Part shown: positions 8,204 through 24,757 of the stretch, piece after piece | How the letters are laid out: every line of letters starts with the position of its first letter | Numbering within the stretch: the first letter of the stretch is position 1 | IMG/VR virus record: IMGVR_UViG_3300037116_000299 | Span: 62,001-126,000 of that record | Direction: 5' to 3' (one strand) | Length of the DNA stretch: 64,000 nt | Notes under the pieces: model-generated | What the model was told of the DNA's origin: nothing | Databases searched by the model: none | What the model saw: the letters and a program-made list of their open reading frames with translations, nothing else | Made by a program: the position numbers and the translations under genes

Positions 8204-8389
8204 TTAGACCTCAATCTCTATGCCGTCTTCGACAATCGAAGTGATCTCCTCACCCTTGAGGGTCTCTTCGTTTACGGGAGCGATCGTGCGATCCTTCTCC
8301 CATAGAGCTTTGGCTTCAGCGCCCGACTTTGCTTTGATCTCGTAGGTGCGCTCGATGACTCGCTGCGCGTAGATGGTGTAGGTCTTCAT
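8204..8389 (-). CDS. small hypothetical protein
   Basis: ORF with SD, coupled to upstream gene. Confidence 0.55.
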   Translation of the reverse strand: MKTYTIYAQRVIERTYEIKAKSGAEAKALWEKDRTIAPVNEETLKGEEITSIVEDGIEIEV

Positions 8390-9507
8390 CAGCCCTCCTT
8401 GGCCGTTTCCCGCTGATAGCGGAACTCACATGTGGCCGCACTTCCCTGCTCGATCTCGGACCACTTGAAGAGGCACGGATCGGTCAGATAATTGGCGTAG
8501 GGATTGATCTCGAGCAGACGGGTCTTGAGGCGGTAGTACACTCCTCCGCTACCGCTGATCCAGGGATCGATCGTGCACGGGTTCACCGGATCCCGCTCTT
8601 CGCGCTCCAGGAACACGTCGAAGACCACCGAATCCACATGACACGCGTCACGGAACTCCAGGTCAAAGAATCGAGTAATCGCCTGCCGGATCTGAGCAGC
8701 GTACTTGCTGACCTCAGGATGAGTCGCCCGGTAGTTGTACTGACTGATGCCGACCAGTTCCCGATCCTTCATAAAGCAACGGAACTCGCACCAGTCCGGC
8801 ATCGCGATGCCCTTGCGGACAAAGATGTGAGGCGCATACTTCATGGCCAGCTGAGTCTGCAGATCCTCATAGATCCGCTCCGTGCCGGCCGTGAGCAGCT
8901 CGAAGGCCTGCTTGCCACTGGTGATCTGGCCATTAGGCACCTGGCCCCTGGCGTCGATACCCCAGTACATCGCGTCCTTGGGACTGCGCGAACCCAGGCG
9001 GATGAACGCCTTGTCGTAATGCCGGATCATGTGATCCAAGTGGTCGATCATCAGGTCCTTGATCGTCTCGTGGTTTTCCGGCGCGCTGAAGGCTTCACCC
9101 AGCTCGGCGTTGTAACTGCCCAGGGTCTCGGCTTGCCCCCGACTGAGCTTCAGATACATTGACGGAATCGAGAGATCCCGCAACGCCTTCGGCCAGTTCT
9201 CAAGGTAGGTCGGAAGCGACAGCTCCCACATCGAAGGCTTGGGCGCATACTTCTCATCCCGCGGCTTCTTCGACCACTCGTCGAACGCGGCCGCGTGCGC
9301 TGCCATCAGTGCCTTGGCGACCAGGATCCGTAAAGGGGACCCGGGTTCCAGAGTGTGGGGATTGATCTCGTGTAGCGGGACGCCGGCAACGCGGTTGCAG
9401 CCCTCACAAGGATGGGTGATGTGGCTGAGGCAGCCTGCGTGATCGCAGGGCTGTCCACGTTCCAGAACGGGCATAGCGTCTCCTAAAACAGCAATGGCTC
9501 GCGTCAT
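8389..9507 (-). CDS. Cdc123/D123-like (R2K clade) ATP-grasp protein
   Basis: FIRLGSRSPKDA, EFRCFMKDRELVGISQY, VVFDV and LLEINPY motifs. Confidence 0.75.
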   Translation of the reverse strand: MTRAIAVLGDAMPVLERGQPCDHAGCLSHITHPCEGCNRVAGVPLHEINPHTLEPGSPLRILVAKALMAAHAAAFDEWSKKPRDEKYAPKPSMWELSLPTYLENWPKALRDLSIPSMYLKLSRGQAETLGSYNAELGEAFSAPENHETIKDLMIDHLDHMIRHYDKAFIRLGSRSPKDAMYWGIDARGQVPNGQITSGKQAFELLTAGTERIYEDLQTQLAMKYAPHIFVRKGIAMPDWCEFRCFMKDRELVGISQYNYRATHPEVSKYAAQIRQAITRFFDLEFRDACHVDSVVFDVFLEREERDPVNPCTIDPWISGSGGVYYRLKTRLLEINPYANYLTDPCLFKWSEIEQGSAATCEFRYQRETAKEG

Positions 9508-9986
9508 GAGGCGCGAGCCTGGGGTACGACCCCTAACTTGTTGAGCATCGAGATGTCGAGTGTCCACACGTGCAGGCTCCGTTGAGCCCACAGTTCGAAC
9601 GCACCCTCAGCGTAGTAACGAGCGTCCGCCAAGGACCATTCGTTGACCTTCGCCAGGTGAGCCAAAGCTTCATTGACGCGGCCGCGGCTTTCCGCCAGGC
9701 CGATGTGCTTCACCTCGTGGCAGGACGGACACAGCGCCAGCATGTCGGTAAGCGCCTGGATTCGTTTCTGGTCGTGATACTGCCATTTCTCGTGGCATTC
9801 GACCGGCCACTTGGGCCCCACACCGTTGCAGATCTCGCAGCGATAGTGCGCCTTGCGATAGGCCATCCGCTTGATCCGGGTCCACATCTCGGCCGTGACT
9901 TCCGATCGCACGTTCGAGAACCAACACGTGGATGGCACTAGTTCGATCGTGAGTCTGGGCGGTGTTAGTCCGTCAATACCTGGCAT
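9504..9986 (-). CDS. HNH endonuclease-family protein
   Basis: IELVPSTCWFSNVRS, CEIC, ECHEKW, LCPSCHEVKH. Confidence 0.85.
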   Translation of the reverse strand: MPGIDGLTPPRLTIELVPSTCWFSNVRSEVTAEMWTRIKRMAYRKAHYRCEICNGVGPKWPVECHEKWQYHDQKRIQALTDMLALCPSCHEVKHIGLAESRGRVNEALAHLAKVNEWSLADARYYAEGAFELWAQRSLHVWTLDISMLNKLGVVPQARAS

Positions 9987-11719: not shown

Positions 11720-11793
11720 TGGTTGGGGAGCAGGGATTCGAACCCCGATCGAGCGCGTCAGAGGCGCTTGTCCTACCGTTGAACGACTCCCCA
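11720..11793 (-). tRNA. tRNA-Gln(CTG)
   Basis: Cloverleaf TGGGGAG/CTCCCCA, anticodon arm AGCGC-CTCTGAC-GCGCT, GTTCGAATC, encoded CCA. Confidence 0.92.
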
Positions 11794-11802
11794 ATGTGCT
11801 AC

Positions 11803-12264
11803 TTAGCGGATGATTCCGTACAGGTCGAGATGACCGATCGCAGGATCTACCTGCGCAAAGGTCGTCGGCACCGTGCAGATCGCTGTCATGACGCGGCCCT
11901 TCGTTCCATAGAACTCTGGGTTGACATCGGAGAAGGTGAAAACCGTAACCAATTCACCAAGCTCCTTGAGGACCTTGGCCAATTCCCGACTATTCCGAAC
12001 CGACAGGACGATGGTAGTCATCTCCCGATAGCCTTCATGCCAGTTCTCGTTGCGGAGGAGCAACCTGGGTTCAGCCGGAGTGCAGGAAAGATGCTCGTTC
12101 TCCATCTTGCGGGCGACATGCGCAACCTGAGCCATCAAACGGCCAGGTTCCATCGGGATACGGGTGGTGACGGTGGCCTTGCGTTCCTTGGTCGTAACGA
12201 GCACCGATTCAGGCACGATCACATAAATGCGCGGGGGCTCCGGCAGTAACTTCTTCTTCTTCAT
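11803..12264 (-). CDS. pth2: peptidyl-tRNA hydrolase, Pth2 family
   Basis: MEPGRLMAQVAH, TIVLSV, D...EF..T..TAIC pattern. Confidence 0.8.
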   Translation of the reverse strand: MKKKKLLPEPPRIYVIVPESVLVTTKERKATVTTRIPMEPGRLMAQVAHVARKMENEHLSCTPAEPRLLLRNENWHEGYREMTTIVLSVRNSRELAKVLKELGELVTVFTFSDVNPEFYGTKGRVMTAICTVPTTFAQVDPAIGHLDLYGIIR

Positions 12265-12282
12265 ATTGTCCTTTGTTGCCGC

Positions 12283-13011
12283 TTAGGATGCGCGGCCTTC
12301 ACAGGCTGGCTGGCCACAACAGCAGGTGGTCTCGCCACACGCTGTACGTCCCTTGCTCTGTACGGGCAGAATGGAGGATGCAAACACGACCCGACGTGCG
12401 ATCGCGTACATCACCAACTGCGCTTTGTTGTGGACGCCCAGTTTCTGGTACGTGTTGAACTTGTGAACTTCCACCGTCTTCACACTGATGCCCAGCATGA
12501 TGGCGATCTCCTTCACCGTGTTGCCTTCGGCCAGGAGCTTGAAGACCTCGCGCTCGCGCGGGGTCAGCTGATCGATCTTTGAGACCATAGCAGGGTTGCC
12601 GATGAACCGATCCGCCGCCGGCATGTACTTCGTCCCGCGGTGAACCCGTTCAATGGCAACCTGCAGCTCGGCGCAACTAGCTGTCAGCTCGACGACTCCG
12701 TCGGCGCCGGCCTTGACGGCCTCGATGACATGTTCTTCCTCGCCGTTCGCGGCCAGGAAGATCACCCGAAGCGTCCGATGTTGCTGGCGAGCCCACCGGG
12801 CTGCGTCATACGGATTTGGACCCGGGATCGTTGCGTCGAGAATCAGGATATCTACACCCAGGTTCACCGCCTCTTCGGCTGCCTCCCTGGCATCCCCGAA
12901 GTCGGCGAGGACGCGAATCGCGTCACTCTTGGTGAGGGTTTCCCGTACACACTCCCGCAGGAGGGTATGCTTATCGGCGATCACACAACGAATCACTAAA
13001 ACTCCAGACAA
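12283..13011 (-). CDS. NarL/LuxR-family response regulator (orphan)
   Basis: REC domain with ILILD; LTPREREVFKLLAEG...KEIA..LGISVKTVEVH. Confidence 0.9.
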   Translation of the reverse strand: MSGVLVIRCVIADKHTLLRECVRETLTKSDAIRVLADFGDAREAAEEAVNLGVDILILDATIPGPNPYDAARWARQQHRTLRVIFLAANGEEEHVIEAVKAGADGVVELTASCAELQVAIERVHRGTKYMPAADRFIGNPAMVSKIDQLTPREREVFKLLAEGNTVKEIAIMLGISVKTVEVHKFNTYQKLGVHNKAQLVMYAIARRVVFASSILPVQSKGRTACGETTCCCGQPACEGRAS

Positions 13012-13089
13012 CTCAACGTGAGCCGGGTATAGGTGTCAGCAACTCAAACAATCTAACCCGGTTGTCAAGAACAATCCAATCCCACTAAG

Positions 13090-13580
13090 GCGTGAGGTCG
13101 CTAATCGACCACCACGAGGGAGGAAGGCTCCCGGGCTTTCACCGGGATGCAGGCGACTGAGTATTCAAGTTCAACCCTTACTTGATGCCTTGTTAGGCAG
13201 CAGCGAGATACGCTGCCTCGAATGCCGCGGCCGGAGCCGGGAAAGCGAGGACTTCTGCGGTCTTGCTGGCGAGGTAACCCGTGGTGTTGGCAGTTATTCG
13301 TCGTGGTCTCCCATATCGCGGGCGGCCGACTCGGCGCGTCACCATCTTGTTCCGTATCCCGTCGAAGCCGTGACGGGCCCACCTCAAAGCTCTTGTCCTA
13401 TTGGGACAGTGGTTCAAAAGAGCGTCGAGGTGGACCCGGCGGGAGTCGAACCCGCGTCCGAAACGAAGAAGAAGATGTGTGTCTTTTCACGAGCGTTTTA
13501 GTCCATCCGTTTCCAGCGGACCAAACCCCATTGCTGGGGAAACTTGTTATGTCCACCTCCAGAGAATCGCATCGGGAAAG
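13090..13580 (-). ncRNA. ssrA: tmRNA, circularly permuted two-piece gene (acceptor piece ~13580-13431, spacer 13428-13381, coding piece 13380 to ~13090; outer ends approximate)
   Basis: 3' tmRNA end GGACGCGGGTTCGACTCCCGCCGGGTCCA lies upstream of the 5' end GGGCCCGTCACGGCTTCGACGGG; G3-U70 pair; ATAACT-GCC resume site; tag ends in YLAAA*. Confidence 0.9.
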
Positions 13581-13604
13581 ACATTGAGGTATAGGGCGAA
13601 CCCC

Positions 13605-13901
13605 TTAGACTTCGAGGTGCGTAAGCAGCTCAGTCCGTATCGTGCAACTGGCCGGCACGCCGTGACGGCCGCTGCCCCACTGCACTTGAACCTGGCCGTG
13701 AAACCCGCTCTGCCAGTTCGGACTGATCTTCAGGTCCACTGTGTGGCAACCCGCGTCCTTGCAGAGCTGCAGCACCTGGCGGCATAGCTCGGCGATGGTC
13801 GCAGGAAGCACGGGAGTCTGAAGCACCTGCAGATCGCAGGTAAGGCACTTCAGGGTGTCGCCCGCCGGGCGCGGATGTTGACAGATACAAAACTCGCTCA
13901 T
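13605..13901 (-). CDS. hypothetical protein (CxC...CxxC)
   Basis: ORF with GGAGG SD. Confidence 0.55.
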   Translation of the reverse strand: MSEFCICQHPRPAGDTLKCLTCDLQVLQTPVLPATIAELCRQVLQLCKDAGCHTVDLKISPNWQSGFHGQVQVQWGSGRHGVPASCTIRTELLTHLEV

Positions 13902-14050
13902 GATCCTCCTGCGGCTACTTCAGCTGTCACTTCCAACTGGCCTTCAAGGTCGGAGTCGCATTGACGTGCATCCTGTGCCCATTCCCAATAGCCAGCTCGA
14001 GTGTCGCCGTTGGCAACCTCATACTGCCAATCCTTGACTGGGTACAGAGA
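13898..14050 (-). pseudogene. phage protein, probably 5'-truncated at the island boundary
   Basis: Phage-like [22 protein letters not shown] segment; upstream sequence switches to island composition. Confidence 0.4.
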
Positions 14051-14113
14051 AATCTCGATCAGCGGGCCCGCGATGCCATCCTTAGCGCAGCTGCAACTAA
14101 CAGGAGCAAACCC

Positions 14114-14326
14114 CTGAATGCAGCGCAGATACAAAAGCGCTTTGGGGATAAAGTTCGCGCAGCCAGGCTTGAGAAGGGCATTTCACAAGAGTCTCTCGCG
14201 TTTGTGTCTGACCTGGACCGGGCTTATATCGGCGGAGTTGAAAGAGGCGAAAGAAACATTAGCCTGTTCAATATCTAAAAGATAGCTCGTAGCCTTAATG
14301 TTCCAGCGAAGGACCTGCTGTCTTAG
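14114..14326 (+). pseudogene. XRE/C-protein-like HTH regulator with in-frame TAA
   Basis: [20 protein letters not shown]...[27 protein letters not shown]; stop at 14276-14278. Confidence 0.75.
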
Positions 14327-14529
14327 TTGGCGCCGCGAGAACTGAACGGAAATGTGGTCATGTCCGCGGCATCTTCGTTGGGTTCAATTCCAGAATGATT
14401 TGACCGGATTCGAATCCCCGCAGCGCATCCTTTAGGCTGTTCTTTGACCCCTGACACCGGATTGGGGCGGCGAGCCCCTCCTGTACATTCGATTGCACTA
14501 TGAGCGATCTACATCCGATATTCCAGCAC

Positions 14530-15426
14530 CTATCGTAGAACCCACCATGGATTCTCCGTGATTCCGTCAGGAAGGTGCTTCAGGCTGTGGATGGCGATCC
14601 TGAAAAGGATATTGGAGACTGGGCCGCCTCCTAGGATTAACGTGCCCAGGAGAAAGGATCCCACTCTTTTTCCGGTGCTTATGCCCGCGCTTTGCGTAAG
14701 GGATACGTTCTTTAGGGACATCTCAACTCCATACATCAGGGCCGCTACTCCTCCAAAGCCAAAGCTTATAGTCCATCCCTCTGTCCACGCATCAGAAAAC
14801 CAGAGGCTTGGATGGATGAGCACATATCCTGTGCTTATCAACTCCAACCAAATGTAATAGACCCCTGTAGGCACAATCGAAATCCATGCGTACAGCGCCA
14901 GCCACAGCCACAACCAATGGCGATGACGGATTCCAGTGAGCACGTCCATAAACTCAGCGTCTGTTCGCGCGTTCTTTCCCAATGCAGTTCCAATAAGCCC
15001 AGACAGTAACGTCAACGCCGCCATTCCGAGAATGAACTGCCCCGTCGTTGGAACATAGCCGAATATTGAGACCGAAGAGGAGACATCACTCGGAACGAAG
15101 TGAAGTAGTGAGAGCATACCTCCCGAGAGGATTAGGGACGAGACAATGCCCACGACCCACGGGCCCCTTTTTACAAGAGTTACCGCAACAGCAACTCCGA
15201 TGCTTATTCCGACAGCCCACATCAGATTGGTCACGGCCTCATAGTCGTCTGGGCTACCTTCATGCAGAAACCTAAAGCCCATCGTCATTGCCCCAGCTGC
15301 CGCCATGCCGTACCAGATGGCAATCAGCAATGAGGCGATAGGATGTAAGCCTTCGGGCTCAGCGCGCGAGGGATCCTGAAAGATAGGAGCGGATTCGACT
15401 GCGGATGTATCGCCCGTTCTGTCCAT
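14530..15426 (-). CDS. multi-pass membrane protein
   Basis: About seven hydrophobic segments; start MDRTG with GGAG SD. Confidence 0.7.
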   Translation of the reverse strand: MDRTGDTSAVESAPIFQDPSRAEPEGLHPIASLLIAIWYGMAAAGAMTMGFRFLHEGSPDDYEAVTNLMWAVGISIGVAVAVTLVKRGPWVVGIVSSLILSGGMLSLLHFVPSDVSSSVSIFGYVPTTGQFILGMAALTLLSGLIGTALGKNARTDAEFMDVLTGIRHRHWLWLWLALYAWISIVPTGVYYIWLELISTGYVLIHPSLWFSDAWTEGWTISFGFGGVAALMYGVEMSLKNVSLTQSAGISTGKRVGSFLLGTLILGGGPVSNILFRIAIHSLKHLPDGITENPWWVLR

Positions 15427-15437
15427 TAAGGAATCTC

Positions 15438-15800
15438 CTATGACAAGTCCAGCTTCTTCGGCACTATTAAGCTGTATATGACCCAAACAACAAAGAAAGC
15501 CCCTGTCAATACATTGACAATCTCCCAATCCGATCTCGACATGCGGACTGGTAACAGAGGATTGAACAGAACGGCGATCGCACCAAATACCCAGACCCAA
15601 AGAAGGTTTCCTTCTGCGTGGCGCTTGGTTGCGGCGAATGCTGAGGCCATGCAGATTAGAAGCCTCAGAAGGACATAAAACGCGTAGGGCCACCGAGTAG
15701 CCGCCGCGGTGAACAGAACAAGGGCACAGATTCCCAGCAATGCGGTCTCGCCTTTGATGAGGCTATCCCCTGGCGCGCCTTGTTTATCCGATCCTGTCAT
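15438..15800 (-). CDS. DUF6804-like small membrane protein
   Basis: WPYAFYVLLR...LFNPLLPV...RSDW pattern. Confidence 0.65.
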   Translation of the reverse strand: MTGSDKQGAPGDSLIKGETALLGICALVLFTAAATRWPYAFYVLLRLLICMASAFAATKRHAEGNLLWVWVFGAIAVLFNPLLPVRMSRSDWEIVNVLTGAFFVVWVIYSLIVPKKLDLS

Positions 15801-15896
15801 CTTCAGGGCCTATCCTCTTCTACGAAGATTCGCACAGATTGTAGCGCGCTCCTCGATCTCGCGACATCTCGACCTGCTATTGTCCTGGTCGGCTGA

Positions 15897-16154
15897 TTAA
15901 TCGTCACTCGATGCTCGCGATCCGGCGCCCAATATCACGAGAATGCATACGACCAAGTGAACCCAGAACCACGCACTAAGACCCTGGTCGGAATAGATCA
16001 TCACCAGGATTATCAATCGGGGGAAGAACATCCAGCTAAGTGCTGCCCACGGCTGGCCGAATGGCATCGGCATATTCTGCCACCATTCAATGAAGAGGCT
16101 GATCCTTGGCAGAAAGAGGCTGACAATCAGGAACCAAATCGGCAGATCGTACAT
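15897..16154 (-). CDS. small membrane protein
   Basis: Three hydrophobic helices with LPRI/FPRL repeats. Confidence 0.65.
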   Translation of the reverse strand: MYDLPIWFLIVSLFLPRISLFIEWWQNMPMPFGQPWAALSWMFFPRLIILVMIYSDQGLSAWFWVHLVVCILVILGAGSRASSDD

Positions 16155-16417
16155 TGGTCGCTCACTATTCGACTATTCTGGTGCGCGGAGCCTAGCCGAG
16201 GGGTTCAAATCCCCAGCATTAGGCTGATTTTGAACTCTTTGCCTCTTAGAGAATTGATGATGTCGACAACCATTAGTTACTTCCTTCCTTGTGGGATGCC
16301 GAGATCAGGCCGTATTCCATCATCACGTTGCGACGAATGCGCGCGCAATCCCATCCGCTATTAGCGGATGGATGCCCTCATTGTGATCAACGTATATAGT
16401 GCTTACTGCGCTGGCAA

Positions 16418-18205
16418 TCAAGCTCGGGCCTCAAGTGACTTGGCTAGTATCTCTAACTGTCTGATGAAGACCCGCCGACCTTTCTTCTCTTGCAATCCTG
16501 CGCGTATTTCACGCTGAGTCGCAGCGTAGTCGCCTTGCTCGAAGTGGTATCGGGCCAATTCTAGATGCATTTTCTGCCTTACTTGTCGAGCTAGATCTCG
16601 TCTTGAAGTCTTGGCCGCCATATTCTCAGCACGTTTGTACAACCGGCGGCCTGCCTCATAATCTCCTTCCCTCAGGTGCAGAAGACCTATAGTCGCAATC
16701 AACTCAACATGGTCATCAACGTTCCTTGGCCTGGAGTCTAGAACATGTTTGGCCTGAGCAGTCTGACCTTCCATTAGCAAGAAATAGGATAAGTTGTTGA
16801 TGATGGAGAAAGACTTGGGATATTGAGCATATCCCTCCATCAACAGTTGGATCGCCTTCTCTCCAAAACCAGCTTCACCGTAATAGCTTCCGAGCGATGC
16901 ATAGTTGTCAGCAGAAAGCGGGCCGAACGTTCGTAGTGCTTCAATCTGCAAGATTGCTTCTGGGTAATTATCTTGTTCAGCATAAAAGATGCTTAAGAGT
17001 GAGCGCGTTTCTCGACTAGAAGGGAACAGTTCGACCGCGTGCTCCAATACCTTTATAGCGAGAGGCTTTCTGCTCGTTAGCCCATACACGCGAGCCAAAT
17101 TGTCATACGGGATATGAGAGTTTCTCGGCGCTTTCTCAATTGCAAGCTTCAGTTCGACAACGGCTCTATCAAAAGACTTCTCATGTACGAAAGTTACCGC
17201 GATGTTTGAATGGGCGCGCCCAACCTCATCGCTGGAAAGCGTATCCCCTCCCAACTCGAGAATTCTTACGATTTGCGATCTTGCCATCGAATGCCGCTTC
17301 GATTGCATGTAGGCAGCAGCCAACTGATCACGCGCTTGTATATCCGCTGGATGCCGTTCTACGAAATCTTGCAACATTTCAATCGCTTGATCAGATTTAT
17401 CAAACGTGAGCAAAGTTCCGGCGAGGCTGATCACGGTTGTCGCTGAGTCAGGCGCCAAAGCGAGGGCCGTCTTGAATGCCTTTTCAGCACGAGAATGATC
17501 ACCCTGAAGAGCGTACGCGACTCCCATTGAGTGGTAGAGCTGCGGGCTGCGAAAGTCCAAATGTGAGGCGGCACGAAACTCATTCAATGCACGGCGAAGG
17601 TCCGACCTCTGGAGACACATGATGCCTAAGAGGAAGCGCACATACGGATCGCGTGGACTAAGAGTTGCCGCCTTTGAGAGATGTGTGTTTGCATCTTCGA
17701 AGCGTCCTGCCTGAATTAGGACGTTTGATAATCCGACTTCGACAGCTGGGTTATCAGGGTAGGTAGCAAGCAATTTCTCATACCAGCGTTCCGCCTCAAC
17801 CGTACGTCCCGCTTCGAAATGTAACCGAGCGAGAGTTATGCTGGCCAGGTAGTTTCCTGGGTCAAGTTCCAAGGCGGTTTCTAATTCCTTCAAGGCCTCA
17901 TCGGGTTGACCCTGCTTCAAGAGAGCAATCCCAAGATTTGCATGTGCGCGACCACTACGTGGGAAGCGATCGCTGTGCCGACGCACCGATCGCTCAATAC
18001 CCGCGAGAATATTCTCTGCCGAAGGCGTAGTAGCGCCCACACCCTCTTTCGGCCAATCGATTTCGACAGACTGATCGCCTCTCCGGCTAACCGAGGCGGC
18101 TGTCCCGGGCAGCAACACATTTGTCGAAGGAGCGCTTAGGTCAAATCGCTCGGGGATCGTGCTCTTCTCAAATTCTCGAAGTTCGTCTTTGGAAGCTGTA
18201 TTCAT
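16418..18205 (-). CDS. tetratricopeptide-repeat protein
   Basis: Many TPR units (AHANLGIALLKQGQPDEA; YHSMGVAYALQGDHSRAEKAFKTALALAP); ATGA overlap with kinase. Confidence 0.9.
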   Translation of the reverse strand: MNTASKDELREFEKSTIPERFDLSAPSTNVLLPGTAASVSRRGDQSVEIDWPKEGVGATTPSAENILAGIERSVRRHSDRFPRSGRAHANLGIALLKQGQPDEALKELETALELDPGNYLASITLARLHFEAGRTVEAERWYEKLLATYPDNPAVEVGLSNVLIQAGRFEDANTHLSKAATLSPRDPYVRFLLGIMCLQRSDLRRALNEFRAASHLDFRSPQLYHSMGVAYALQGDHSRAEKAFKTALALAPDSATTVISLAGTLLTFDKSDQAIEMLQDFVERHPADIQARDQLAAAYMQSKRHSMARSQIVRILELGGDTLSSDEVGRAHSNIAVTFVHEKSFDRAVVELKLAIEKAPRNSHIPYDNLARVYGLTSRKPLAIKVLEHAVELFPSSRETRSLLSIFYAEQDNYPEAILQIEALRTFGPLSADNYASLGSYYGEAGFGEKAIQLLMEGYAQYPKSFSIINNLSYFLLMEGQTAQAKHVLDSRPRNVDDHVELIATIGLLHLREGDYEAGRRLYKRAENMAAKTSRRDLARQVRQKMHLELARYHFEQGDYAATQREIRAGLQEKKGRRVFIRQLEILAKSLEARA

Positions 18206-19332
18206 GAATTTGCTCCAGTCGTCAGAGTATTTTGCAGTCGCGACTGCTTCAACTCCGGAACTTTCCGATATGCTTTCTTGCGTTCGATCCAGCGAGCATA
18301 TGCGGCTTGATTCTTGAGGACCACCAGGCACTGATTAATCTGCAGGAACGTGGACGTGCAGTCTTTGGCACGTTGGCGGTAATCCAGTGCAGCAAGCGCC
18401 CTATACATACGATTAAGAATTGGAGCGATTGAGCGCGGCACAGCGGCACCGAAGTCCCGCACATCAGGGAGAGGAAATCGATTGGATATTGACCCAACCC
18501 CCTTATGGAATTCGTTCACTTTGTCGCCAGGAAGAATCGATCCTATAACCATATTGAGATCCATCAACATGTTTCTGCTAAACAGATGAAGGTTCAACGG
18601 AGTACCTGTGAACATCTCGAACAGTACAGCTCCCAAGGCGAACATGTCTCCGGCATATGCAATGTCTGGCAAAATGTCGTGGAGCGACGCCACCATCTCT
18701 AAGGGTGCGTACGTCCAGTCGCCTGGAGGTCCCGTGTACCGCTTTAATGGCCCCCTCGAGTCTGTCAATGAACGGGCTGTACCGAAGTCGGACAACCGTA
18801 GAGTGCCGTCCGTCATGACGAGAAAGTTTGACGGCTTAATGTCGCGATGGACGATTCCTTGCCGATGTATCCTCTGGACCGCTCTGCAAATCGTCCGAAA
18901 GTGAAGAAGTTTATCCGCAGGGTCAATGTCATATGTGTCTAAGACTGTTCCGAGATCGCAAGAAGCCAATTCCATTGCATAGAACCTGAGCGTAACCGGA
19001 AGAATCATCCCCAAAGGATGTTGGAATGGTTCAACTATCTGCTGCATATCCGAATATCGCCGTAAGATGTCTGGCTGATCTTCTAAACCACCCAAAACCT
19101 CGACTTCCCTCGTGAATGATTCGAGCCGATAGGGATCAATAACGGAAGGATCGAAGAACTTGAGCGCCACCTTCTGTCCAGTTACTTGGTCGTGTGCTTC
19201 GAAAAGCAAGGAAAAGGTACCGCCACCGCCGGTGACCCCCAACCGTTTCATGTTGGTGAATCGACCGCAGAGTTCGGTCTTGCTTTCGATCAAACTAAGA
19301 AACGGCTCAGGGTTTGAGCTCGGATTTGCCAT
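18202..19332 (-). CDS. Hanks-type Ser/Thr protein kinase
   Basis: GGGGTFS, VALK, HRDIKPSN, DFG, YAPLE, DMFALG. Confidence 0.93.
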   Translation of the reverse strand: MANPSSNPEPFLSLIESKTELCGRFTNMKRLGVTGGGGTFSLLFEAHDQVTGQKVALKFFDPSVIDPYRLESFTREVEVLGGLEDQPDILRRYSDMQQIVEPFQHPLGMILPVTLRFYAMELASCDLGTVLDTYDIDPADKLLHFRTICRAVQRIHRQGIVHRDIKPSNFLVMTDGTLRLSDFGTARSLTDSRGPLKRYTGPPGDWTYAPLEMVASLHDILPDIAYAGDMFALGAVLFEMFTGTPLNLHLFSRNMLMDLNMVIGSILPGDKVNEFHKGVGSISNRFPLPDVRDFGAAVPRSIAPILNRMYRALAALDYRQRAKDCTSTFLQINQCLVVLKNQAAYARWIERKKAYRKVPELKQSRLQNTLTTGANS

Positions 19333-19615
19333 CCGTCTCTCCAAATTGCCTTCTCAGAAATGCAACGGCATCGTCCGGATGATCTCGAAGAATTCGGAGT
19401 ATATCCTCCGGCACCTTTCCTGCCGATAACAGGAGTGCATCCCGGTCAAACCCAAAATACTCCGAAACTCGATCAACAAGATCCTCTGAGGGGCTGATAG
19501 TCTCGTTTTCCAATTTGCTCAGGTAGGTATAGTTCACCCTCAATTCTGGGGCCAGAGACTTAATGCCTAGCCCACTCTCCAACCGCAATTGGCGCAGAAT
19601 CTTCCCGAACTTCAT
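19307..19615 (-). CDS. XRE-family HTH regulator
   Basis: FGKILRQLR...LA....NYTYLSKLEN...PS...L...AGKVP. Confidence 0.85.
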   Translation of the reverse strand: MKFGKILRQLRLESGLGIKSLAPELRVNYTYLSKLENETISPSEDLVDRVSEYFGFDRDALLLSAGKVPEDILRILRDHPDDAVAFLRRQFGETDGKSELKP

Positions 19616-19782
19616 GGGCTAAAGATACACTGGGTTGATATAAATGTCAACCCAGATTGTATGCCCTCGATACAAGGCCCCGTACCTCGGTTCGAGTCGG
19701 GCTTGCGAACTCCTTTGGGTTCAGATTCGGGGGTTCAATTCCAGTCCTTTGAGCTTGATTGGAAACGTCTTGTAATGCTCTC

Positions 19783-19858
19783 CGAATCCCTGGAGAGGAT
19801 CGAACTCTCGACCACCGACGCCACAGGTCGGCGCTCTACCAGCTGAGCTACGGGCAAC
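19783..19858 (-). pseudogene. tRNA-His(GTG) with destroyed 3' acceptor strand
   Basis: G-1, D, anticodon (CCGAC-CTGTGGC-GTCGG) and T arms intact; 3' strand is CAGGGAT instead of CGGGCAA; no CCA. Confidence 0.75.
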
Positions 19859-19865
19859 ACATTTG

Positions 19866-20186
19866 TTAGAGAGGGATGATTGGCAACCCTGCTCCGAAGT
19901 TGTTCTCCTGGTACCCACCGCCGGCGCGATCGCCTTCGCTCTGGATACCGCCAGGCACCGCAATAGCGACTGGGTCGGGTTCGGCGACTGCTGTCGCGGC
20001 CGCCATACGCGCCAGGATGTTGGCGCCCAGATCGTCCTGCTCGCCCTGCTCGAAGGTGTTGGGGAAGTTCTGCAGCGATTCGTGGAACTTCTGCTGTGCG
20101 TACTCCCACTCAAGATCCGTAAAGGTTACCTGTCGTCCCATGATGCTCCTTCTTTCAAATCGAATTGCAGCGGTAAGGTCTTCCAC
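19866..20186 (-). CDS. hypothetical protein (likely start MGRQVT)
   Basis: ORF with AGGAG SD before MGRQ. Confidence 0.5.
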   Translation of the reverse strand: MEDLTAAIRFERRSIMGRQVTFTDLEWEYAQQKFHESLQNFPNTFEQGEQDDLGANILARMAAATAVAEPDPVAIAVPGGIQSEGDRAGGGYQENNFGAGLPIIPL

Positions 20187-20310
20187 CCTGTACGCCGGTT
20201 TGCTCCCACCGTGTAGGGATCACAAAGCCATTGTTGGCAAGGTAGCCACGGCATTACACGCATAGTCTTGACCAGACCGGGATTCGGGCTATGCGCGTCC
20301 GCTGCAAACT

Positions 20311-20385
20311 TGGTGTCGCCACCGGGACTTGAACCCGGATTACCGCCGTGAAAGGGCAGCCTCCTAACCATTGGAGGATGGCGAC
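20311..20385 (-). tRNA. tRNA-Glu(TTC)
   Basis: GTCGCCA/TGGCGAC acceptor, CTGCC-CTTTCAC-GGCGG, GGTTCAAGTCC, CCA. Confidence 0.92.
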
Positions 20386-20554
20386 AAACTTCAATGCTTG
20401 ACCGTTCCCGTGTGGAACGTAACGATCACATCGGCAATGAGCATTTCCTTGATCTGGCTCTCGATCGTTCCCGCCAGACACTTCAGCCACACATCTTCGC
20501 TCATCAGCTTCGGCGGCTCACCGTTGACTTCGATGGTTGCAACGAATAGGGCCT

Positions 20555-21094
20555 TCATGCGGCAAGCTCCTGGGGCACCGCGGCTCCTTGCCGCGCTGCC
20601 TTCTTGACCGAACTCACATCGGCCCGGGTGATGCGATACCGCTTCACCAACTTCTGGGTCCAGTGCTTATTCTTGTCCAGAACCAGTTTGTACGCACAAG
20701 CAATGATGTGCTCTGGCGTAATGCTGGTGCAAACGACTTTCTGACCATTCCAGTCGAAGCGATAACAAACGAAGACACGCTTGTTGTCGATGATGAAAGG
20801 CTTCCGCTCTTGCCAATGCTCATAAGCATGGCAAGCGGTCATGTTCCCTACCTCGACTGCTGCCTTGTAGAACATCTCGTGGCTACAGCCAATCCAATAT
20901 CCGGCCCGGAAGTCATCAAAGAATCGGTTGAAGTCAGTCAGGCCGAATCGCATGCCGCTGGTGACTGCTAGCCGAACCGCCGTATTCATCGACTGATTGA
21001 TCCGGATGTAGGCGAAGTCTGTGGCCTGCTGGCTCTTCTGCCATACGTGCAGGCATAAGCTGTACGCCGCGCTGTTTCTCTTGCAAGTCTTCAT
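20555..21094 (-). CDS. hypothetical phage protein
   Basis: ORF MKTCKRNS...QELAA with AGGAG SD. Confidence 0.6.
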   Translation of the reverse strand: MKTCKRNSAAYSLCLHVWQKSQQATDFAYIRINQSMNTAVRLAVTSGMRFGLTDFNRFFDDFRAGYWIGCSHEMFYKAAVEVGNMTACHAYEHWQERKPFIIDNKRVFVCYRFDWNGQKVVCTSITPEHIIACAYKLVLDKNKHWTQKLVKRYRITRADVSSVKKAARQGAAVPQELAA

Positions 21095-21108
21095 GATTCT
21101 CCTAAAAG

Positions 21109-21186
21109 TGGTCAGTGTGGAAGGATTTGAACCCCCGACCTCGCTCTCCAAATGAGCGCGCTCTAACCGGACCGAGCTACACACTG
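21109..21186 (-). tRNA. tRNA with Pro-type body; loop ATTTGGA reads TTG (Gln) in the standard register
   Basis: CAGTGTG/CACACTG acceptor, A73, CCA; arm CGCTC-ATTTGGA-GAGCG. Confidence 0.8.
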
Positions 21187-21193
21187 ATGTTTG

Positions 21194-21481
21194 TTACTGC
21201 TGCGAACCCCAGCGTTCTTCGCCGGCATTCTTGTCGACGGCACCTTCGCCGTGATAGCGTTCGACCTCTTCCTGCAGGGCGTCGACGAACTCCTGAATCC
21301 GGTTCAGCGGGATCTGCATGTAGCAGGTTGCAACCCCACCGGTTCCATTGAGTGGCCGGATCTCAACAAAGGGCGGATCACCGGCGGACTGAAACGTCCG
21401 AAAGTCCAAACCTGTGGTCTTTCCTTTACCACCGCCACCATAGCAAGTATGCCGGGGTCTACCAAAGTGAACTCGCCTCAT
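21194..21481 (-). CDS. hypothetical protein
   Basis: ORF coupled to neighbour. Confidence 0.5.
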   Translation of the reverse strand: MRRVHFGRPRHTCYGGGGKGKTTGLDFRTFQSAGDPPFVEIRPLNGTGGVATCYMQIPLNRIQEFVDALQEEVERYHGEGAVDKNAGEERWGSQQ

Positions 21482-21684
21482 TTGAGCGCCTTTGCAAATG
21501 CCATATCGTCGGCATTGGCTTTCTCGGTAAGGACAATGCCCCAGTCGTCGCGGATCTCGCGGATCACGTGTTCAGGAGTTATATTGGCTCGAACGCACTC
21601 CTCGACGATGTCGTAGATGCGGTCCTCAAGACCGCTCGGCCGGACAACCTGAAAGCTTGCGGTCATTCCTAACGGTTTACTCAT
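21478..21684 (-). CDS. hypothetical protein
   Basis: ORF with GGAGG SD. Confidence 0.55.
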   Translation of the reverse strand: MSKPLGMTASFQVVRPSGLEDRIYDIVEECVRANITPEHVIREIRDDWGIVLTEKANADDMAFAKALK

Positions 21685-21803
21685 TTAGAACGATCCTCCC
21701 CAGAAGTATGCCCAGGCCCGGCCACGCGTGACTCTCACGCACAACGAGTTGCGAAACCCTCCAGCGCGATACCAATTGCGCTTGGCTATCCTCATGTACC
21801 CCA

Positions 21804-22157
21804 TCATGGCTTCGGCTCAACCTTCGTGGATGCGTTGTACGCATCCTCGAGCAGCTTCCACTGTGCTGGCTTGGTGTGGTGTTCGCGACAAGGTGCTTGG
21901 TATAAGACCGTGCCGTAGTTCGCGCCGATCGCGACCAGGGTTGTGATATCTGCGTTGTGAGTCTCGATCACGGTAGCGGCATTCACATGATTGCCGGCCT
22001 TGACATAGGAGCTGATTGAGCACTTACGGCCGCTCACGATCTTCTCTAAGAGCGCACGTTCCCGGATCACCTTGACTAACTTCCTGCCGAACTCTGGATC
22101 ACCCTCGATCTGGGTCAAAGCGTCATTCAGAATCAGAACTGTGGTGTTCAATCCCAT
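21804..22157 (-). CDS. hypothetical phage protein
   Basis: MGLNTTVLILNDAL..IE.DPEFG...HNAD pattern; SD present. Confidence 0.6.
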   Translation of the reverse strand: MGLNTTVLILNDALTQIEGDPEFGRKLVKVIRERALLEKIVSGRKCSISSYVKAGNHVNAATVIETHNADITTLVAIGANYGTVLYQAPCREHHTKPAQWKLLEDAYNASTKVEPKP

Positions 22158-22370
22158 CGGACTCCTTTTTCTTGTCTTCTAAGCTGTCGACATACGCATC
22201 CATCGCTGACCAGTCAACAGCCAGTGGATCGTGACAAAGCGCCGCGATGCCTCCGAAGAGCACGGCAATGATGGCAAGGAACTCAAGTAACTCGCGCATG
22301 ACGATGCCTTTCTGGGATCACCTTGGCTACGGTAACGCACATAGCCAGGGCAAACCCTAAGTTGAAACTC

Positions 22371-22739
22371 TTACCACCAGACACTCACCTTGACGATGGA
22401 GGTCTGGGGATTGAAGTGATGCTTACGGAGGAACTGCTTGTACTCCTCGATCGCTTCTTCGACGGTGGGCTTGACACCCTTGCGCGCTTCGATGAACTTG
22501 GTGACGGCTGCATGGTCGCCGCCTCCGAAGGTAGTGCCCAGTGAGAAGATGCGCTCTTCGAAGAAGGCGCGCTGTTCGGCCGTGACCTTCGCCGGATCGA
22601 TGTCATCGATGCTGATGCTGTGGGTCAGGTCATTACCGGTGCCCCGCGTCAGCATGAACATCAGGTGATAAATCGGTGGGGTCACATCGTCGTCGTACAC
22701 GTCAAAGCAGGGTTCAGCCTTCATTACTTTCCGTCCCAT
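22371..22739 (-). CDS. hypothetical protein
   Basis: ORF overlapping the SpoU gene. Confidence 0.55.
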   Translation of the reverse strand: MGRKVMKAEPCFDVYDDDVTPPIYHLMFMLTRGTGNDLTHSISIDDIDPAKVTAEQRAFFEERIFSLGTTFGGGDHAAVTKFIEARKGVKPTVEEAIEEYKQFLRKHHFNPQTSIVKVSVWW

Positions 22740-23317
22740 CCAAGTACATCAATCTCGCTGGTATAGCCACGCGTCTCGTGCAGCATCTGACTCAGCGGAA
22801 CAATCTCTTCCACGCCGGAAAGCTGGCGTTTCATACGACGATCACCCAGGATCAGGTTCACAGCCTGCGACAGATTGAGGCAATGGTGTGTCGGGATGTG
22901 AACGAACTGATGGCAGAAGCGGCGAATCACCTGCTTCACGCTTCCATCTTCCGGCCCGAACACGTACACCGCATTCTCAGGATGCTCGAAGGTAGTCAAT
23001 GGCACGCTGTTCTCGACCAACTCGATGCACACCGGGATCACTCCCTCGGGAAGCAGATCGAACGGACGCTCCGTTCGCTGCCAGTGCACGTCCTTGTAGC
23101 CCTTCATGCGTTCTTCCCGCGGCAGACGATCCATCTGCTCAGGAACAACGCGGCTTCCGGTCCATAGCAAAGTCGGAACACCCCAGCAGGAGCAAGCTCG
23201 GATCACACCGGCCATGTTGTGCGAGTATTTCGGGTTGTTGAGGATCACGGCAGGCACGTCGACACGCGTCTTGGCCTTGGGGATGTTCGGGTTCACTGCA
23301 TTCGCTAACATGTTCAC
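22724..23317 (-). CDS. SpoU/TrmH-family (SPOUT) RNA methyltransferase
   Basis: NPKYSHNMAGVIRAC, YVFGPEDGS, IP...CLNLSQAV. Confidence 0.88.
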   Translation of the reverse strand: MNMLANAVNPNIPKAKTRVDVPAVILNNPKYSHNMAGVIRACSCWGVPTLLWTGSRVVPEQMDRLPREERMKGYKDVHWQRTERPFDLLPEGVIPVCIELVENSVPLTTFEHPENAVYVFGPEDGSVKQVIRRFCHQFVHIPTHHCLNLSQAVNLILGDRRMKRQLSGVEEIVPLSQMLHETRGYTSEIDVLGWDGK

Positions 23318-24045
23318 TCCGGGTAACAGACGGTGTTGTAGGACTTCAGGATCAGTTTGTGGCTGTTCCCTCCGGCCGTATAGTGCGTGATCGAACAGTT
23401 CTTGACGTCGTCGTTGGCATCAACATCGAGATACTGTTCCTCGGTCCAGCGCTCCAGCAGCTTGCGGAGCACCAGCACCACAACGCTGTGGGTGACCACC
23501 AGGACCTTCTCGCCGGCGTAGTCGCGGCTCAGGGTGCCCAGAATGCTGTGAAGCCGCATGCCGACGTCCGGGCGCGACTCCCCGCCAGGTGGGCGATACC
23601 AATACTTGCCCTCTTTGTTCCGCCGGGTGACTTCCTCCGGATACTTCGCCTGCAGACCCTCACGGGTCAGCCCGTCGAAGATGCCGAACTCGATCTCGCG
23701 CAGCCGTTCGTCCTCGACGACCTTGATGCCCGGCCGAAAGCGCTCGAGGCCCGCCTTGTTCTCTACGCCCAGGCCCTTGAGGATCTGGTCAGTTGTCTGC
23801 TTGGTGCGCAGATAGGGCGAGGTGAGCACGACGTCGAACGGGTAGAGGTTGCGCAGCTCCACACCTACGTGGAGCGCCTGGCCGAAGCCCAGGGGCGTCA
23901 GGGGTGTGTCCTGGTCCCGGATGTCGCCCACGTAGGACTTCAGCAGGCCTTTGGCCTTCGCCTGTTCCTTCTCTACGTTGCGCTGGGACTGGCCGTGGCG
24001 AACAATCACCAGGTCGGTGGGCCATTTCATGTCGGTAGGTAACAT
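23314..24045 (-). CDS. histidine phosphatase (phosphoglycerate mutase family)
   Basis: IVRHGQS, SPYLRT, LREIEFG, PPGGES, VVTH. Confidence 0.92.
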   Translation of the reverse strand: MLPTDMKWPTDLVIVRHGQSQRNVEKEQAKAKGLLKSYVGDIRDQDTPLTPLGFGQALHVGVELRNLYPFDVVLTSPYLRTKQTTDQILKGLGVENKAGLERFRPGIKVVEDERLREIEFGIFDGLTREGLQAKYPEEVTRRNKEGKYWYRPPGGESRPDVGMRLHSILGTLSRDYAGEKVLVVTHSVVVLVLRKLLERWTEEQYLDVDANDDVKNCSITHYTAGGNSHKLILKSYNTVCYPE

Positions 24046-24067
24046 TCAATTCCTCGGGTAAAGCGGT

Positions 24068-24153
24068 TGGCAGGGGTGACAGGATTCGAACCTGCAGTGA
24101 CTTGCGTCGGCGGTTTTGGAGACCGCTGGGCCGAACCGTTGCCCCTCACCCCT
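24068..24153 (-). tRNA. tRNA-Trp(CCA) with long variable arm
   Basis: AGGGGTG/CACCCCT, G73, CCA; GCGGT-CTCCAAA-ACCGC; variable arm GAC-GCAA-GTC. Confidence 0.82.
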
Positions 24154-24402
24154 GTGGGTTGGTGACCGATACTTGATACCGCGCCTCGGATCAGGACGCC
24201 ATTCACCATTACTGCCATTTTCAACACATGCTGAAACAGAACAATCGGGTGAAACACCTAAGAAGGGAGGCGGGAGTTGCGCCCGCCGGTCGCGCCAACC
24301 CGTTCTGCTCAACGGACAGCCTGTAGCAACCATCGGAGTAGCAGCTCCGGTTGCATGCGTTGGACCGATACTTAGAGTCGCCTCGGTCTCCAGGGCGCTG
24401 CT

Positions 24403-24479
24403 TGGTGGCGGTGCGTGGACTTGAACCACGGACCTCGACGTTATGAGTGTCGCGCTCTAACCAGCTGAGCTACACCGCC
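24403..24479 (-). tRNA. tRNA(CAT), Met or Ile2
   Basis: GGCGGTG/CACCGCC acceptor, loop CTCATAA, CCA. Confidence 0.9.
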
Positions 24480-24681
24480 GAACTTGGTGGAGCCTGTTGC
24501 CATCCTCCCGCAGGTGACGGCCCGCGCGGCCCCATGGAGGTTCAAAGAGGTGCAGGGAGGGGTGTTCTCACGTCCCAAGGGATCTACACCGTGCGAGCGT
24601 CAAAGACGTGAGTGTGTCACGACTCGAACAGAAAGATCCTTACCCTGCGTGATGTGAGCACCACTCAGTGCTCACTAAGAT

Positions 24682-24757
24682 TGGCTGACGAGGCAGGGGT
24701 CGAACCTGCGACCAACGCCTTAACAGGGCGCCGCTCTACCAACTGAGCTACTCGTCA
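24682..24757 (-). tRNA. tRNA-Asn(GTT)
   Basis: TGACGAG/CTCGTCA, G73, GCGCC-CTGTTAA-GGCGT, CCA. Confidence 0.92.

What the first reader, a model, noticed from the sequence alone, without database searches (positions are those of the whole stretch)
16418..19615. HTH / Ser-Thr kinase / TPR operon on a foreign island: candidate defence or exclusion system
Seen: three overlapping genes encoding an XRE HTH, an intact soluble Hanks kinase and a ~595-aa all-TPR protein, in lower-GC DNA. Known: kinases such as Stk2 cause abortive infection, and TPR arrays act as sensors in defence systems. Inference: a sensor-kinase module carried by the phage against competing phages or to manipulate the host.
Basis: partly seen in the sequence, partly recalled or inferred. 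Interest (0 to 1): 0.6.

Follow-up and report, generated by a model that had tools for sequence, protein, structure and literature searches.

The report
Phage-borne repressor–kinase–TPR cassette
A temperate 214-kb peat-soil phage carries a foreign, self-contained three-gene module (a self-regulating repressor, an active protein kinase and a TPR partner predicted to bind it) that recurs on mobile DNA in many soil bacteria and distantly resembles an untested database candidate for anti-phage defence.

Summary
Three overlapping minus-strand genes encode a 102-aa XRE repressor, a 376-aa soluble Hanks kinase with every catalytic motif, and a 595-aa TPR protein. They lie in DNA of 50.6% GC inside a 58.9% GC genome, which is a roughly 99% complete jumbo provirus with integrases.

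The three genes form one mobile unit. DNA homology to the nearest relative runs exactly from a palindromic operator over the -35 box to the TPR stop codon. In non-identical metagenomic loci with enough upstream sequence, the kinase sits next to the TPR gene in 34 of 34. The repressor is present in 29 of 32, and the operator in 29 of 29.

A complex model supports kinase–TPR binding (score 0.80, best control 0.00).

All TPR relatives match PADLOC's untested candidate PDC-M71B through their C-terminal part. The kinase matches PDC-M71A only over its catalytic core. The cassette's neighbours elsewhere mix integrases, IS elements, a conjugative element, defence genes and housekeeping genes.

My best reading is a self-repressed sensor-kinase conflict module carried as a prophage moron. 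Defence is plausible but unproven, and a toxin–antitoxin-like addiction role is the main rival. I rate it a new variant of a known kind, of moderate interest.

The parts
19622..19655 (-). Promoter and operator. The palindrome CTGGGTTGACAT..ATATCAACCCAG spans 19655-19630 and covers the -35 box TTGACA (19650-19645). The -10 box TATCTT (19627-19622) ends 6 nt before the HTH ATG, so the mRNA is probably leaderless.
   Evidence: The promoter scan scored 10 of 12 and also flagged the stem; the inverted repeat is I25. The core GGTTGACA-N-TCAACC is invariant in 7 cassettes and present in 29 of 29 non-identical loci that have the HTH. DNA homology to relatives begins at 19652-19655.
19307..19615 (-). 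XRE-family HTH protein of 102 aa, the presumed autorepressor. It has a ~35-aa C-terminal extension beyond the HTH domain.
   Evidence: Pfam HTH_19 1.8e-09, HTH_31 and HTH_3. PHROG transcriptional repressor and regulator families. Homologous HTH directly upstream of the kinase in 29 of 32 loci.
18202..19332 (-). Soluble Hanks-type Ser/Thr kinase of 376 aa, with a conserved ~120-aa helical C-terminal extension. It overlaps the HTH gene by 26 nt.
   Evidence: Pkinase 2.2e-27. The catalytic positions (K58, E76, HRD 162-164, N169, D182 and G184 of DFG, E212) are invariant across 30 homologues, and the N-terminus MANPSS is conserved among the closest of them. Motif and hydropathy check. AF2 model pLDDT 89, with Foldseek matches to ERK2 and PknB.
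16418..18205 (-). TPR partner protein of 595 aa. It has an N-terminal beta element (~20-50), a long helix (61-80), then about 15 TPR-like helix pairs. Its start shares ATGA with the kinase stop.
   Evidence: Many TPR Pfam families. 18-member family alignment with a conserved start. AF2 pLDDT 88. OGT-like superhelix by Foldseek. The C-terminal part matches PDC-M71B in 18 of 18 members. Predicted to bind the kinase.
14330..19750 (.). Low-GC, low-GC3 foreign island (approximate limits) between the phage tmRNA and tRNA-His genes. It holds the cassette, plus an unrelated multi-pass membrane ORF (14530-15426 or up to 15693) and a small hydrophobic ORF (15897-16154).
   Evidence: Composition. tRNA and tmRNA positions. 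The membrane ORF has no homologue in the other cassette loci and no family hit.

Best explanation
The locus is an autonomous, horizontally mobile three-gene conflict module carried as an accessory gene set (a moron) by a temperate jumbo phage.

Shown from sequence and comparison:
- A short XRE repressor gene is transcribed from a promoter whose -35 box lies inside a conserved palindrome.
- It is followed, with overlapping reading frames, by an intact Hanks Ser/Thr kinase and a TPR protein.
- The unit travels as a block bounded by the operator and the TPR stop codon.

Supported by modelling: the N-terminal helix and first repeats of the TPR protein dock on the kinase C-lobe, around the P+1 loop and the helix-G region, which is the usual substrate-docking face.

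Inferred:
- The repressor keeps expression low.
- The TPR protein holds or gates the kinase and uses its long superhelix to recognise a foreign protein, probably from a phage or another mobile element.
- The released kinase then phosphorylates host or invader proteins, blocking the invader or aborting the infection.
- In the lysogen this would exclude competing phages.
For: Module integrity and mobility:
- 78% nucleotide identity to the nearest relative over exactly window 19655-16416.
- The trio is found in all 10 other contexts inspected, which include a conjugative element, integrase-adjacent and IS-flanked sites, and a SIR2/Schlafen/Fic island.
- Kinase adjacent in 34 of 34 loci, HTH in 29 of 32, operator in 29 of 29.

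Active kinase: catalytic residues are invariant in 30 homologues and the fold is canonical.

Kinase–TPR binding: ipSAE 0.80 against a best control of 0.00. That mark was reached by 58 of 80 solved complexes and 2 of 110 mismatched pairs. The runs agree in at least 91% of contacts and the partner's pLDDT is at least 84. The predicted interface residues, TPR 80-97 and kinase 205-207 and 242-253, coincide with invariant or near-invariant columns.

Defence link:
- PDC-M71B is hit by 18 of 18 TPR relatives, best E 4.3e-30, and PDC-M71A by 30 of 30 kinases.
- Among 99 close neighbours of cassettes there are a type I restriction enzyme, SspB, several PADLOC candidates, mad2/mad3, a ThsA-like protein, PIN domains and an integrase.

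Prophage setting: provirus record with a tyrosine integrase and a serine recombinase.

Maintenance: the protein sequences are identical in a second assembly. The DNA is found in peat and permafrost runs from many studies, and contigs from two RNA libraries cover the cassette.
Against: - No member of this family, nor PDC-M71 itself, has a published phenotype.
- The kinase scores better on generic kinase models (mad6, PD-T4-6) than on PDC-M71A, which it matches only over the catalytic core, positions 120-254 of 352.
- The PDC-M71B match covers only about a fifth of that model.
- Many cassette neighbours are ordinary metabolic genes, and I ran no background control for the defence hits.
- No effector other than the kinase is evident.
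- The complex model is a prediction made with my own alignments.
- RNA-library contigs do not prove transcription, because no silent control stretch was laid.
Confidence: 0.5

Rival explanations
1. It is a toxin–antitoxin-like addiction module. The kinase is a growth-arresting toxin. The XRE protein, the TPR protein or both neutralise it and repress the operon, as HipB does for HipA. Its main effect is to stabilise the mobile elements that carry it, including this prophage.
For: - The gene order of an XRE HTH followed by a kinase, with overlapping frames and a palindromic operator, resembles hipBA.
- The distribution is patchy and tied to mobile elements.
- PIN and other toxin–antitoxin genes lie nearby in some loci.
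- The TPR protein is predicted to cover the substrate-docking face of the kinase.
- One locus (L125) has lost the HTH and most of the kinase but keeps the TPR gene.
Against: - The kinase is a Hanks-type enzyme, not a HipA-fold kinase.
- A 595-aa, 15-repeat partner is far larger than an antitoxin needs to be, which suggests ligand recognition.
- Addiction and defence are not exclusive, since many toxin–antitoxin modules act in abortive infection.
Confidence: 0.2
2. It is a lysogenic-conversion signalling module. The kinase and TPR pair reprogram host physiology (metabolism, stress response or envelope) for the benefit of the lysogen, in the manner of PknG-like kinase-TPR regulators or the host-takeover kinase of T7.
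For: - Kinase-TPR architectures are common in bacterial signalling, and fused kinase-TPR proteins appear among the weaker hits (P0033, P0062, P0109).
- Several cassettes sit among housekeeping genes.
- The phage region also carries a response regulator and other regulatory or RNA-modifying genes.
Against: - The same cassette with the same operator moves between unrelated contexts, including a conjugative element, IS-flanked sites and a phage. That fits a self-contained selfish or conflict module better than integration into one host's regulatory network.
- No partner phosphatase, FHA protein or fixed substrate gene accompanies it.
Confidence: 0.15
3. It is a functionless passenger in this phage: a recently captured bacterial cassette that is neutral or silenced by its own repressor.
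For: The composition is still unadapted, with GC3 of 0.50-0.54 against 0.68. A neighbouring C-protein-like gene in the same island carries an in-frame stop. No related phage with or without the island was found for comparison.
Against: All three genes are intact and full length against their homologues. The proteins are identical in a second assembly that differs by 0.4% elsewhere. The region is found at 99% or higher identity in many samples and in RNA libraries.
Confidence: 0.1

Closest known systems
PADLOC phage-defence candidate PDC-M71 (A = kinase, B = TPR protein)
   Same: It is a two-gene kinase-plus-TPR architecture. All 18 TPR relatives hit the PDC-M71B model (best E 4.3e-30) through a specific C-terminal segment, and all 30 kinases hit PDC-M71A.
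   Different: - The matches are partial: kinase core only, and about 105 of 515 positions of the B model.
- Generic kinase models score higher than PDC-M71A.
- This family adds a conserved XRE repressor and operator.
- PDC-M71 itself has no published experimental test that I could find.
Stk2 (Staphylococcus abortive-infection kinase) and PD-T4-6 (E. coli single-gene defence kinase)
   Same: Both use a Hanks-type Ser/Thr kinase as the catalytic element. The HMM hits are PD-T4-6 at 1.5e-29 and Stk2 at 1.5e-14.
   Different: Similarity is limited to the catalytic domain; for Stk2 only positions 194-324 of 500 match. Those systems are single proteins with their own extra domains. Here the non-catalytic function is a separate 595-aa TPR protein, with a dedicated repressor.
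HipBA / HipBST kinase toxin–antitoxin modules
   Same: An XRE HTH gene lies directly upstream of, and overlaps, a Ser/Thr kinase gene, with a palindromic operator at the promoter. HipBST, like this module, has three parts (this comparison rests on established knowledge; the sequence features are).
   Different: The kinase is an eukaryote-like Hanks kinase (Pkinase, with an ERK2/PknB-like fold), not a HipA-fold kinase. The third component is a long TPR solenoid.
PknG-type kinases with a C-terminal TPR domain
   Same: A Hanks kinase works together with a TPR domain. Here the two are predicted to form a complex.
   Different: They are separate, translationally coupled genes rather than a fusion. 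There is no rubredoxin domain. The cassette is mobile and has its own repressor. The comparison with PknG is from general knowledge and was not tested by alignment.
Prophage- and satellite-encoded defence hotspots (morons), for example the P2/P4 hotspots
   Same: An accessory, compositionally foreign cassette sits in a variable region of a temperate phage. The concept is described in PMC9122126, which was listed but not read in detail.
   Different: The carrier here is a ~214-kb jumbo provirus from peat, and the island sits in its tRNA/tmRNA cluster. I could not show that the site is a recurrent hotspot, because no related phages were found.

Membership tests
Hanks-type (eukaryote-like) Ser/Thr protein kinase | Pkinase domain with a Gly-rich loop, VAIK Lys, helix-C Glu, HRDxKxxN, DFG and APE | tested here: met
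   Pkinase scored 96.5 bits against a cut-off of 31.7. All motifs were found and the catalytic positions are invariant in 30 homologues. The fold matches ERK2 and PknB.
XRE/cI-type autoregulated repressor | HTH_3-class domain plus a palindromic operator overlapping its own promoter | tested here: met
   HTH_19, HTH_31 and HTH_3 all score above cut-off. The palindrome covers the -35 box and is conserved in 29 of 29 loci. Binding itself was not tested.
PADLOC PDC-M71 | Protein B matches the PDC-M71B model | tested here: inconclusive
   E 1.9e-28 and 97.5 bits, but the best stretch covers only profile positions 366-473 of 515. All 18 family members hit the model. PADLOC's own coverage rules could not be applied.
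PADLOC PDC-M71 | Protein A matches the PDC-M71A model better than other kinase models | tested here: not met
   PDC-M71A scored 4.7e-19 over positions 120-254 of 352, whereas mad6 scored 2.7e-31 and PD-T4-6 scored 1.5e-29.
PADLOC PDC-M71 | A and B genes adjacent and co-oriented | tested here: met
   The kinase stop and TPR start overlap in ATGA. The kinase is adjacent in 34 of 34 loci.
PADLOC PDC-M71 | Demonstrated anti-phage activity | not testable with these tools
   No experimental report was found. The only paper naming it lists it as a PADLOC output.
Stk2-type abortive-infection kinase | Full-length similarity to Stk2, including the regions outside the kinase core | tested here: not met
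   The Stk2 model matched only positions 194-324 of 500, at E 1.5e-14.
HipA-family kinase toxin | HipA-type kinase fold or domains | tested here: not met
   Pfam returns Pkinase and related Hanks families only. The structural matches are ERK2 and PknB.
TPR superhelix protein | Tandem 34-residue helix-turn-helix repeats forming a solenoid | tested here: met
   TPR_19, TPR_2, TPR_14, TPR_16 and others score far above cut-off. The model shows 30 consecutive helices from residue 85 to 594 and resembles the OGT TPR domain.
NCBIfam named families (MAD6, PglW, PknB and others) | Score at or above the curated cut-off | tested here: not met
   Every hit falls below its cut-off. For example, MAD6 scored 68.6 against 460 and PknB_PASTA scored 75.8 against 450.

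The most novel reading that the evidence does not exclude
The repressor–kinase–TPR trio is a widespread but uncharacterised class of kinase-based immune system in soil bacteria and their mobile elements. Its long TPR superhelix would act as the receptor for an invader protein and gate a Hanks kinase by occupying its helix-G substrate-docking face. A temperate jumbo phage would have captured it to exclude rival phages from its lysogen.
Probability: 0.35. Interest if true: 0.7.

Novelty: new variant of a known kind. Interest (0 to 1): 0.5.

Why it matters
Kinase-based phage defence is known from only a few single-protein examples, and how such kinases sense infection is poorly understood. This module splits the job into three separable parts: a repressor with a defined operator, the kinase, and a large repeat protein predicted to bind it. 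The predicted interface is specific enough to test with point mutants. The family is common in peat and soil metagenomes, which makes it a tractable model for sensor-gated kinase immunity or toxin control. Finding it on a jumbo prophage adds a case of large phages acquiring bacterial conflict systems. If it is instead a pure addiction or signalling module, it is an ordinary accessory gene set.

Tried and rejected
- **Phage databases.** No DNA match for the island in GenBank phages. By protein, the kinase found only distant, kinase-domain-only hits and the TPR protein one weak hit. The cassette is therefore not a common phage gene set.
- **IMG/VR.** Only a second assembly of the same phage was found, so I could not compare a relative lacking the island.
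- **Genome-contig scan with the kinase alignment.** The scan used generic kinase motifs and returned only ordinary Hanks kinases at 25-34% identity.
- **Search of 401 Acidobacteriota genomes** with the TPR and kinase profiles. There was no hit, but only 3-4 of many candidates per genome were scored. This shows neither absence nor the host.
- **Literature.** No paper describes this trio. PDC-M71 is named once, as a PADLOC output.
- **att-like repeats.** T-arm-like 13-14-mers lie at 14379-14393, 16200-16212 and 19730-19744. One exact 14-mer repeat is expected in about 9% of shuffles, and Rfam sees no tRNA fragment there. I do not claim them as integration scars.
- **Downstream membrane ORF (14530-15426) as a fourth component.** Rejected. 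It is absent from all other cassette loci and has no family or Atlas lead.
- **Fold searches.** They gave only generic kinase and generic TPR matches.
- **NCBIfam.** Nothing reached a curated cut-off.
- **Large representative-protein search.** Not used, because no claim here rests on an absence of relatives.
Full report
**1. The observation**

The minus strand carries three ORFs at 19307-19615, 18202-19344 and 16418-18331. Their translations are an XRE-type HTH protein, a protein kinase and a TPR protein.

Homologue alignments fix the real starts. The kinase begins MANPSS at ATG 19332 and is 376 aa. The TPR protein begins MNTAS at ATG 18205 and is 595 aa. The HTH and kinase genes therefore overlap by 26 nt, and the kinase stop and TPR start share ATGA. 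GGAG ribosome-binding sites precede both downstream starts.

The kinase has the Gly-rich loop, VALK, HRDIKPSN, DFG and APLE motifs. None of the three proteins has a hydrophobic segment of membrane-spanning strength.

The cassette is 50.6% GC against 58.9% for the genome. Its genes have GC3 of 0.50-0.54 against a genome mean of 0.68.

**2. The replicon**

The window is bases 62001-126000 of a single 214,300-bp record. The record encodes a portal protein, a baseplate wedge protein, a weak terminase match, a primase and a ribonucleotide reductase. IMG/VR classes it as a provirus, about 99% complete by CheckV. It has a tyrosine integrase and a serine recombinase near its right end. It is therefore a temperate jumbo phage.

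The cassette holds the only Pkinase domain in the genome. It lies in a low-GC island between a permuted tmRNA gene and tRNA-His, inside a cluster of seven tRNA genes.

A second assembly in IMG/VR is 99.6% identical over 11 kb and encodes identical kinase and TPR proteins. The DNA is present at 99% or higher identity in peat and permafrost metagenomes from many studies. Contigs from two metatranscriptome libraries cover about 16025-19585. That last point shows presence in RNA libraries, not proven transcription, because I laid no silent control stretch.

**3. One mobile unit**

Blastn against the nearest relative, a 6-kb soil contig, gives 78% identity over exactly window 19655-16416. That span runs from the promoter palindrome to the TPR stop codon. 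More distant cassettes also begin to align at 19652-19654.

Ten other genomic contexts fetched through the homologues were inspected. All show kinase then TPR, and nine have the HTH directly upstream. The settings were:

- between housekeeping genes
- next to IS66, IS110 and IS1595 elements
- next to an integrase
- inside a conjugative element with relaxase, TrwB and primase genes
- in one island with SIR2, Schlafen-like, Fic and NucS-like genes

A metagenome scan with the TPR alignment gave 59 further loci. Among the 51 non-identical TPR loci overall:

| Test | Result |
|---|---|
| Family kinase adjacent, where enough upstream sequence exists | 34 of 34 |
| XRE HTH upstream of the kinase | 29 of 32 |
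| GTTGA-N-TCAAC palindrome at the HTH start, where the HTH is present | 29 of 29 |
| Palindrome pattern on the + strand of all 394 kb examined | 42 hits |

**4. The regulatory element**

The palindrome CTGGGTTGACAT..ATATCAACCCAG (19655-19630) contains a perfect TTGACA -35 box. A TATCTT -10 box lies 17 nt downstream and ends 6 nt before the HTH ATG. The core GGTTGACA...TCAACC is invariant in seven cassettes whose kinases are only 40-80% identical.

This layout is typical of an operator for a dimeric XRE repressor that shuts off its own, probably leaderless, transcript. Binding is inferred, not shown.

**5. The kinase–TPR pair**

The kinase family is large, with about a thousand clusters found, typically 360-385 aa. 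Its catalytic residues are invariant, and it has a conserved helical C-terminal extension carrying a DYRxR motif. The AF2 model has pLDDT 89 and resembles ERK2 and PknB.

The TPR model has pLDDT 88. It shows a small beta element, a long helix at 61-80, and 30 further helices forming an OGT-like superhelix.

The complex test gave ipSAE 0.80 against a best control of 0.00. That mark was reached by 58 of 80 solved complexes and 2 of 110 mismatched pairs. The runs agree in at least 91% of contacts and the partner's pLDDT is at least 84. The counts hold only roughly, because my own alignments were used.

The contacts place TPR residues 28-31 and 58-97 on kinase residues 129-133, 205-207, 242-260 and 284-297. 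That region is the P+1 loop and helix-G face, where Hanks kinases usually dock substrates or regulators (established knowledge). Many of these positions are invariant in both families, for example the TPR motif RFPxSxRAHANLG and kinase residues PPGD and L246.

The model supports binding but does not show it. That the TPR protein gates the kinase, and that its superhelix senses a ligand, are inferences.

**6. Relation to known systems**

In PADLOC the TPR protein hits only one model strongly: PDC-M71B at E 1.9e-28, through its C-terminal segment. All 18 relatives do the same. The kinase hits PDC-M71A at 4.7e-19, catalytic core only, but scores higher on mad6 and PD-T4-6. Stk2 is matched over the core alone. 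No NCBIfam model reaches its cut-off.

PDC-M71 is an untested candidate. The only paper found that names it lists it as a PADLOC output. I found no paper describing this trio.

The gene order of XRE then kinase, with an operator, recalls hipBA. The kinase fold is different, however.

**7. Neighbourhood evidence for defence**

I scanned 99 ORFs lying within 3.6 kb of cassettes in 29 metagenomic loci.

- Pfam finds aconitase, isocitrate dehydrogenase, acyl-CoA dehydrogenases, transporters and other housekeeping genes. It also finds PIN, AAA_14, an integrase, DUF4007 (SspB) and a YgjP-like protein.
- PADLOC finds a type I restriction enzyme (1.4e-149), SspB (1.6e-115), PDC-M57A/B, PDC-S01, S31, S39 and S42, mad2/mad3 and a ThsA-like protein.

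This picture is suggestive but mixed, and I ran no matched background.

**8. Conclusion**

The anatomy is well supported: a self-contained, mobile, self-repressed kinase–TPR module captured by a temperate jumbo phage.

The function is not shown. I favour a conflict role, meaning defence or exclusion, possibly through abortive infection, at about 0.5. The rivals are a toxin–antitoxin-like addiction role (0.2), host-physiology signalling (0.15) and a neutral passenger (0.1).

It is a new variant of a known kind. It resembles PADLOC's kinase+TPR candidate but is only distantly related to it, and it adds a conserved repressor and operator.

Noticed in passing
window 13102-13521 (-): The phage encodes a permuted (two-piece type) tmRNA gene. 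ARAGORN gives a tag peptide ending AAYLAAA, and Rfam tmRNA_permuted scores 68.7 bits against a cut-off of 47. It borders the foreign island.
   Followed up: partly
window 11720-24757 (-): Seven tRNA genes are scattered through this region, all on the minus strand: Gln-CTG, His, Glu, Gln-TTG, Trp, Met and Asn. The cassette island interrupts this tRNA/tmRNA region.
   Followed up: partly
window 14118-14323 (+): A restriction-modification controller (C-protein)-like HTH gene has an in-frame TAA at 14276-14278. The reading frame continues with typical C-protein sequence after the stop. It is probably a pseudogene and a remnant of another captured system.
   Followed up: partly
window 14379-14393, 16200-16212, 19730-19744 (+): Three copies of a tRNA T-arm-like motif, GGGTTCAA(T/A)TCC, bracket the two low-GC segments. 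A single exact 14-mer repeat occurs in about 9% of shuffles, and Rfam calls no tRNA fragment there. They may be integration scars or chance.
   Followed up: partly
window 16212-16314: Independent DNA assemblies break just downstream of the TPR gene: run X11 at 16212/16270, run X7 at 16250/16314, and the IMG/VR contig ends at 16270. An RNA-library contig bridges 16108-16810. A GC-rich palindrome lies nearby at 16335-16350. The cause is unknown.
   Followed up: no
window 14530-15693 (-) and 15897-16154 (-): A low-GC3 multi-pass membrane ORF (about 298 aa from Met 15426) and a small hydrophobic ORF lie downstream of the cassette on the same strand. Neither has a family, Atlas or homologue lead, and neither appears at other cassette loci.
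   Followed up: partly
window 8389-9591, 12283-13011, 22724-23317, 23314-24045 (-): The phage genes around the island include a D123/ATP-grasp-like protein, a REC+LuxR response regulator, a SpoU-family RNA methylase and a histidine phosphatase.
   Followed up: no
G000:C1:210585-211088 and 213908-214300 (outside the window): A tyrosine integrase and a serine recombinase lie at the right end of the record. The recombinase gene is cut by the end of the record.
   Followed up: partly
L125:6603-8608: This is a decayed copy of the cassette. The TPR gene is intact, but only a ~65-aa kinase remnant remains and there is no HTH. The otherwise identical locus L124 has the full trio.
   Followed up: no
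L133, L134, L135, L138, L139, L140 (upstream of the HTH genes): In one subgroup of cassettes the operator palindrome is listed twice near the HTH start; in all but L135 the two copies differ in sequence. This may mean two repressor-binding sites.
   Followed up: no
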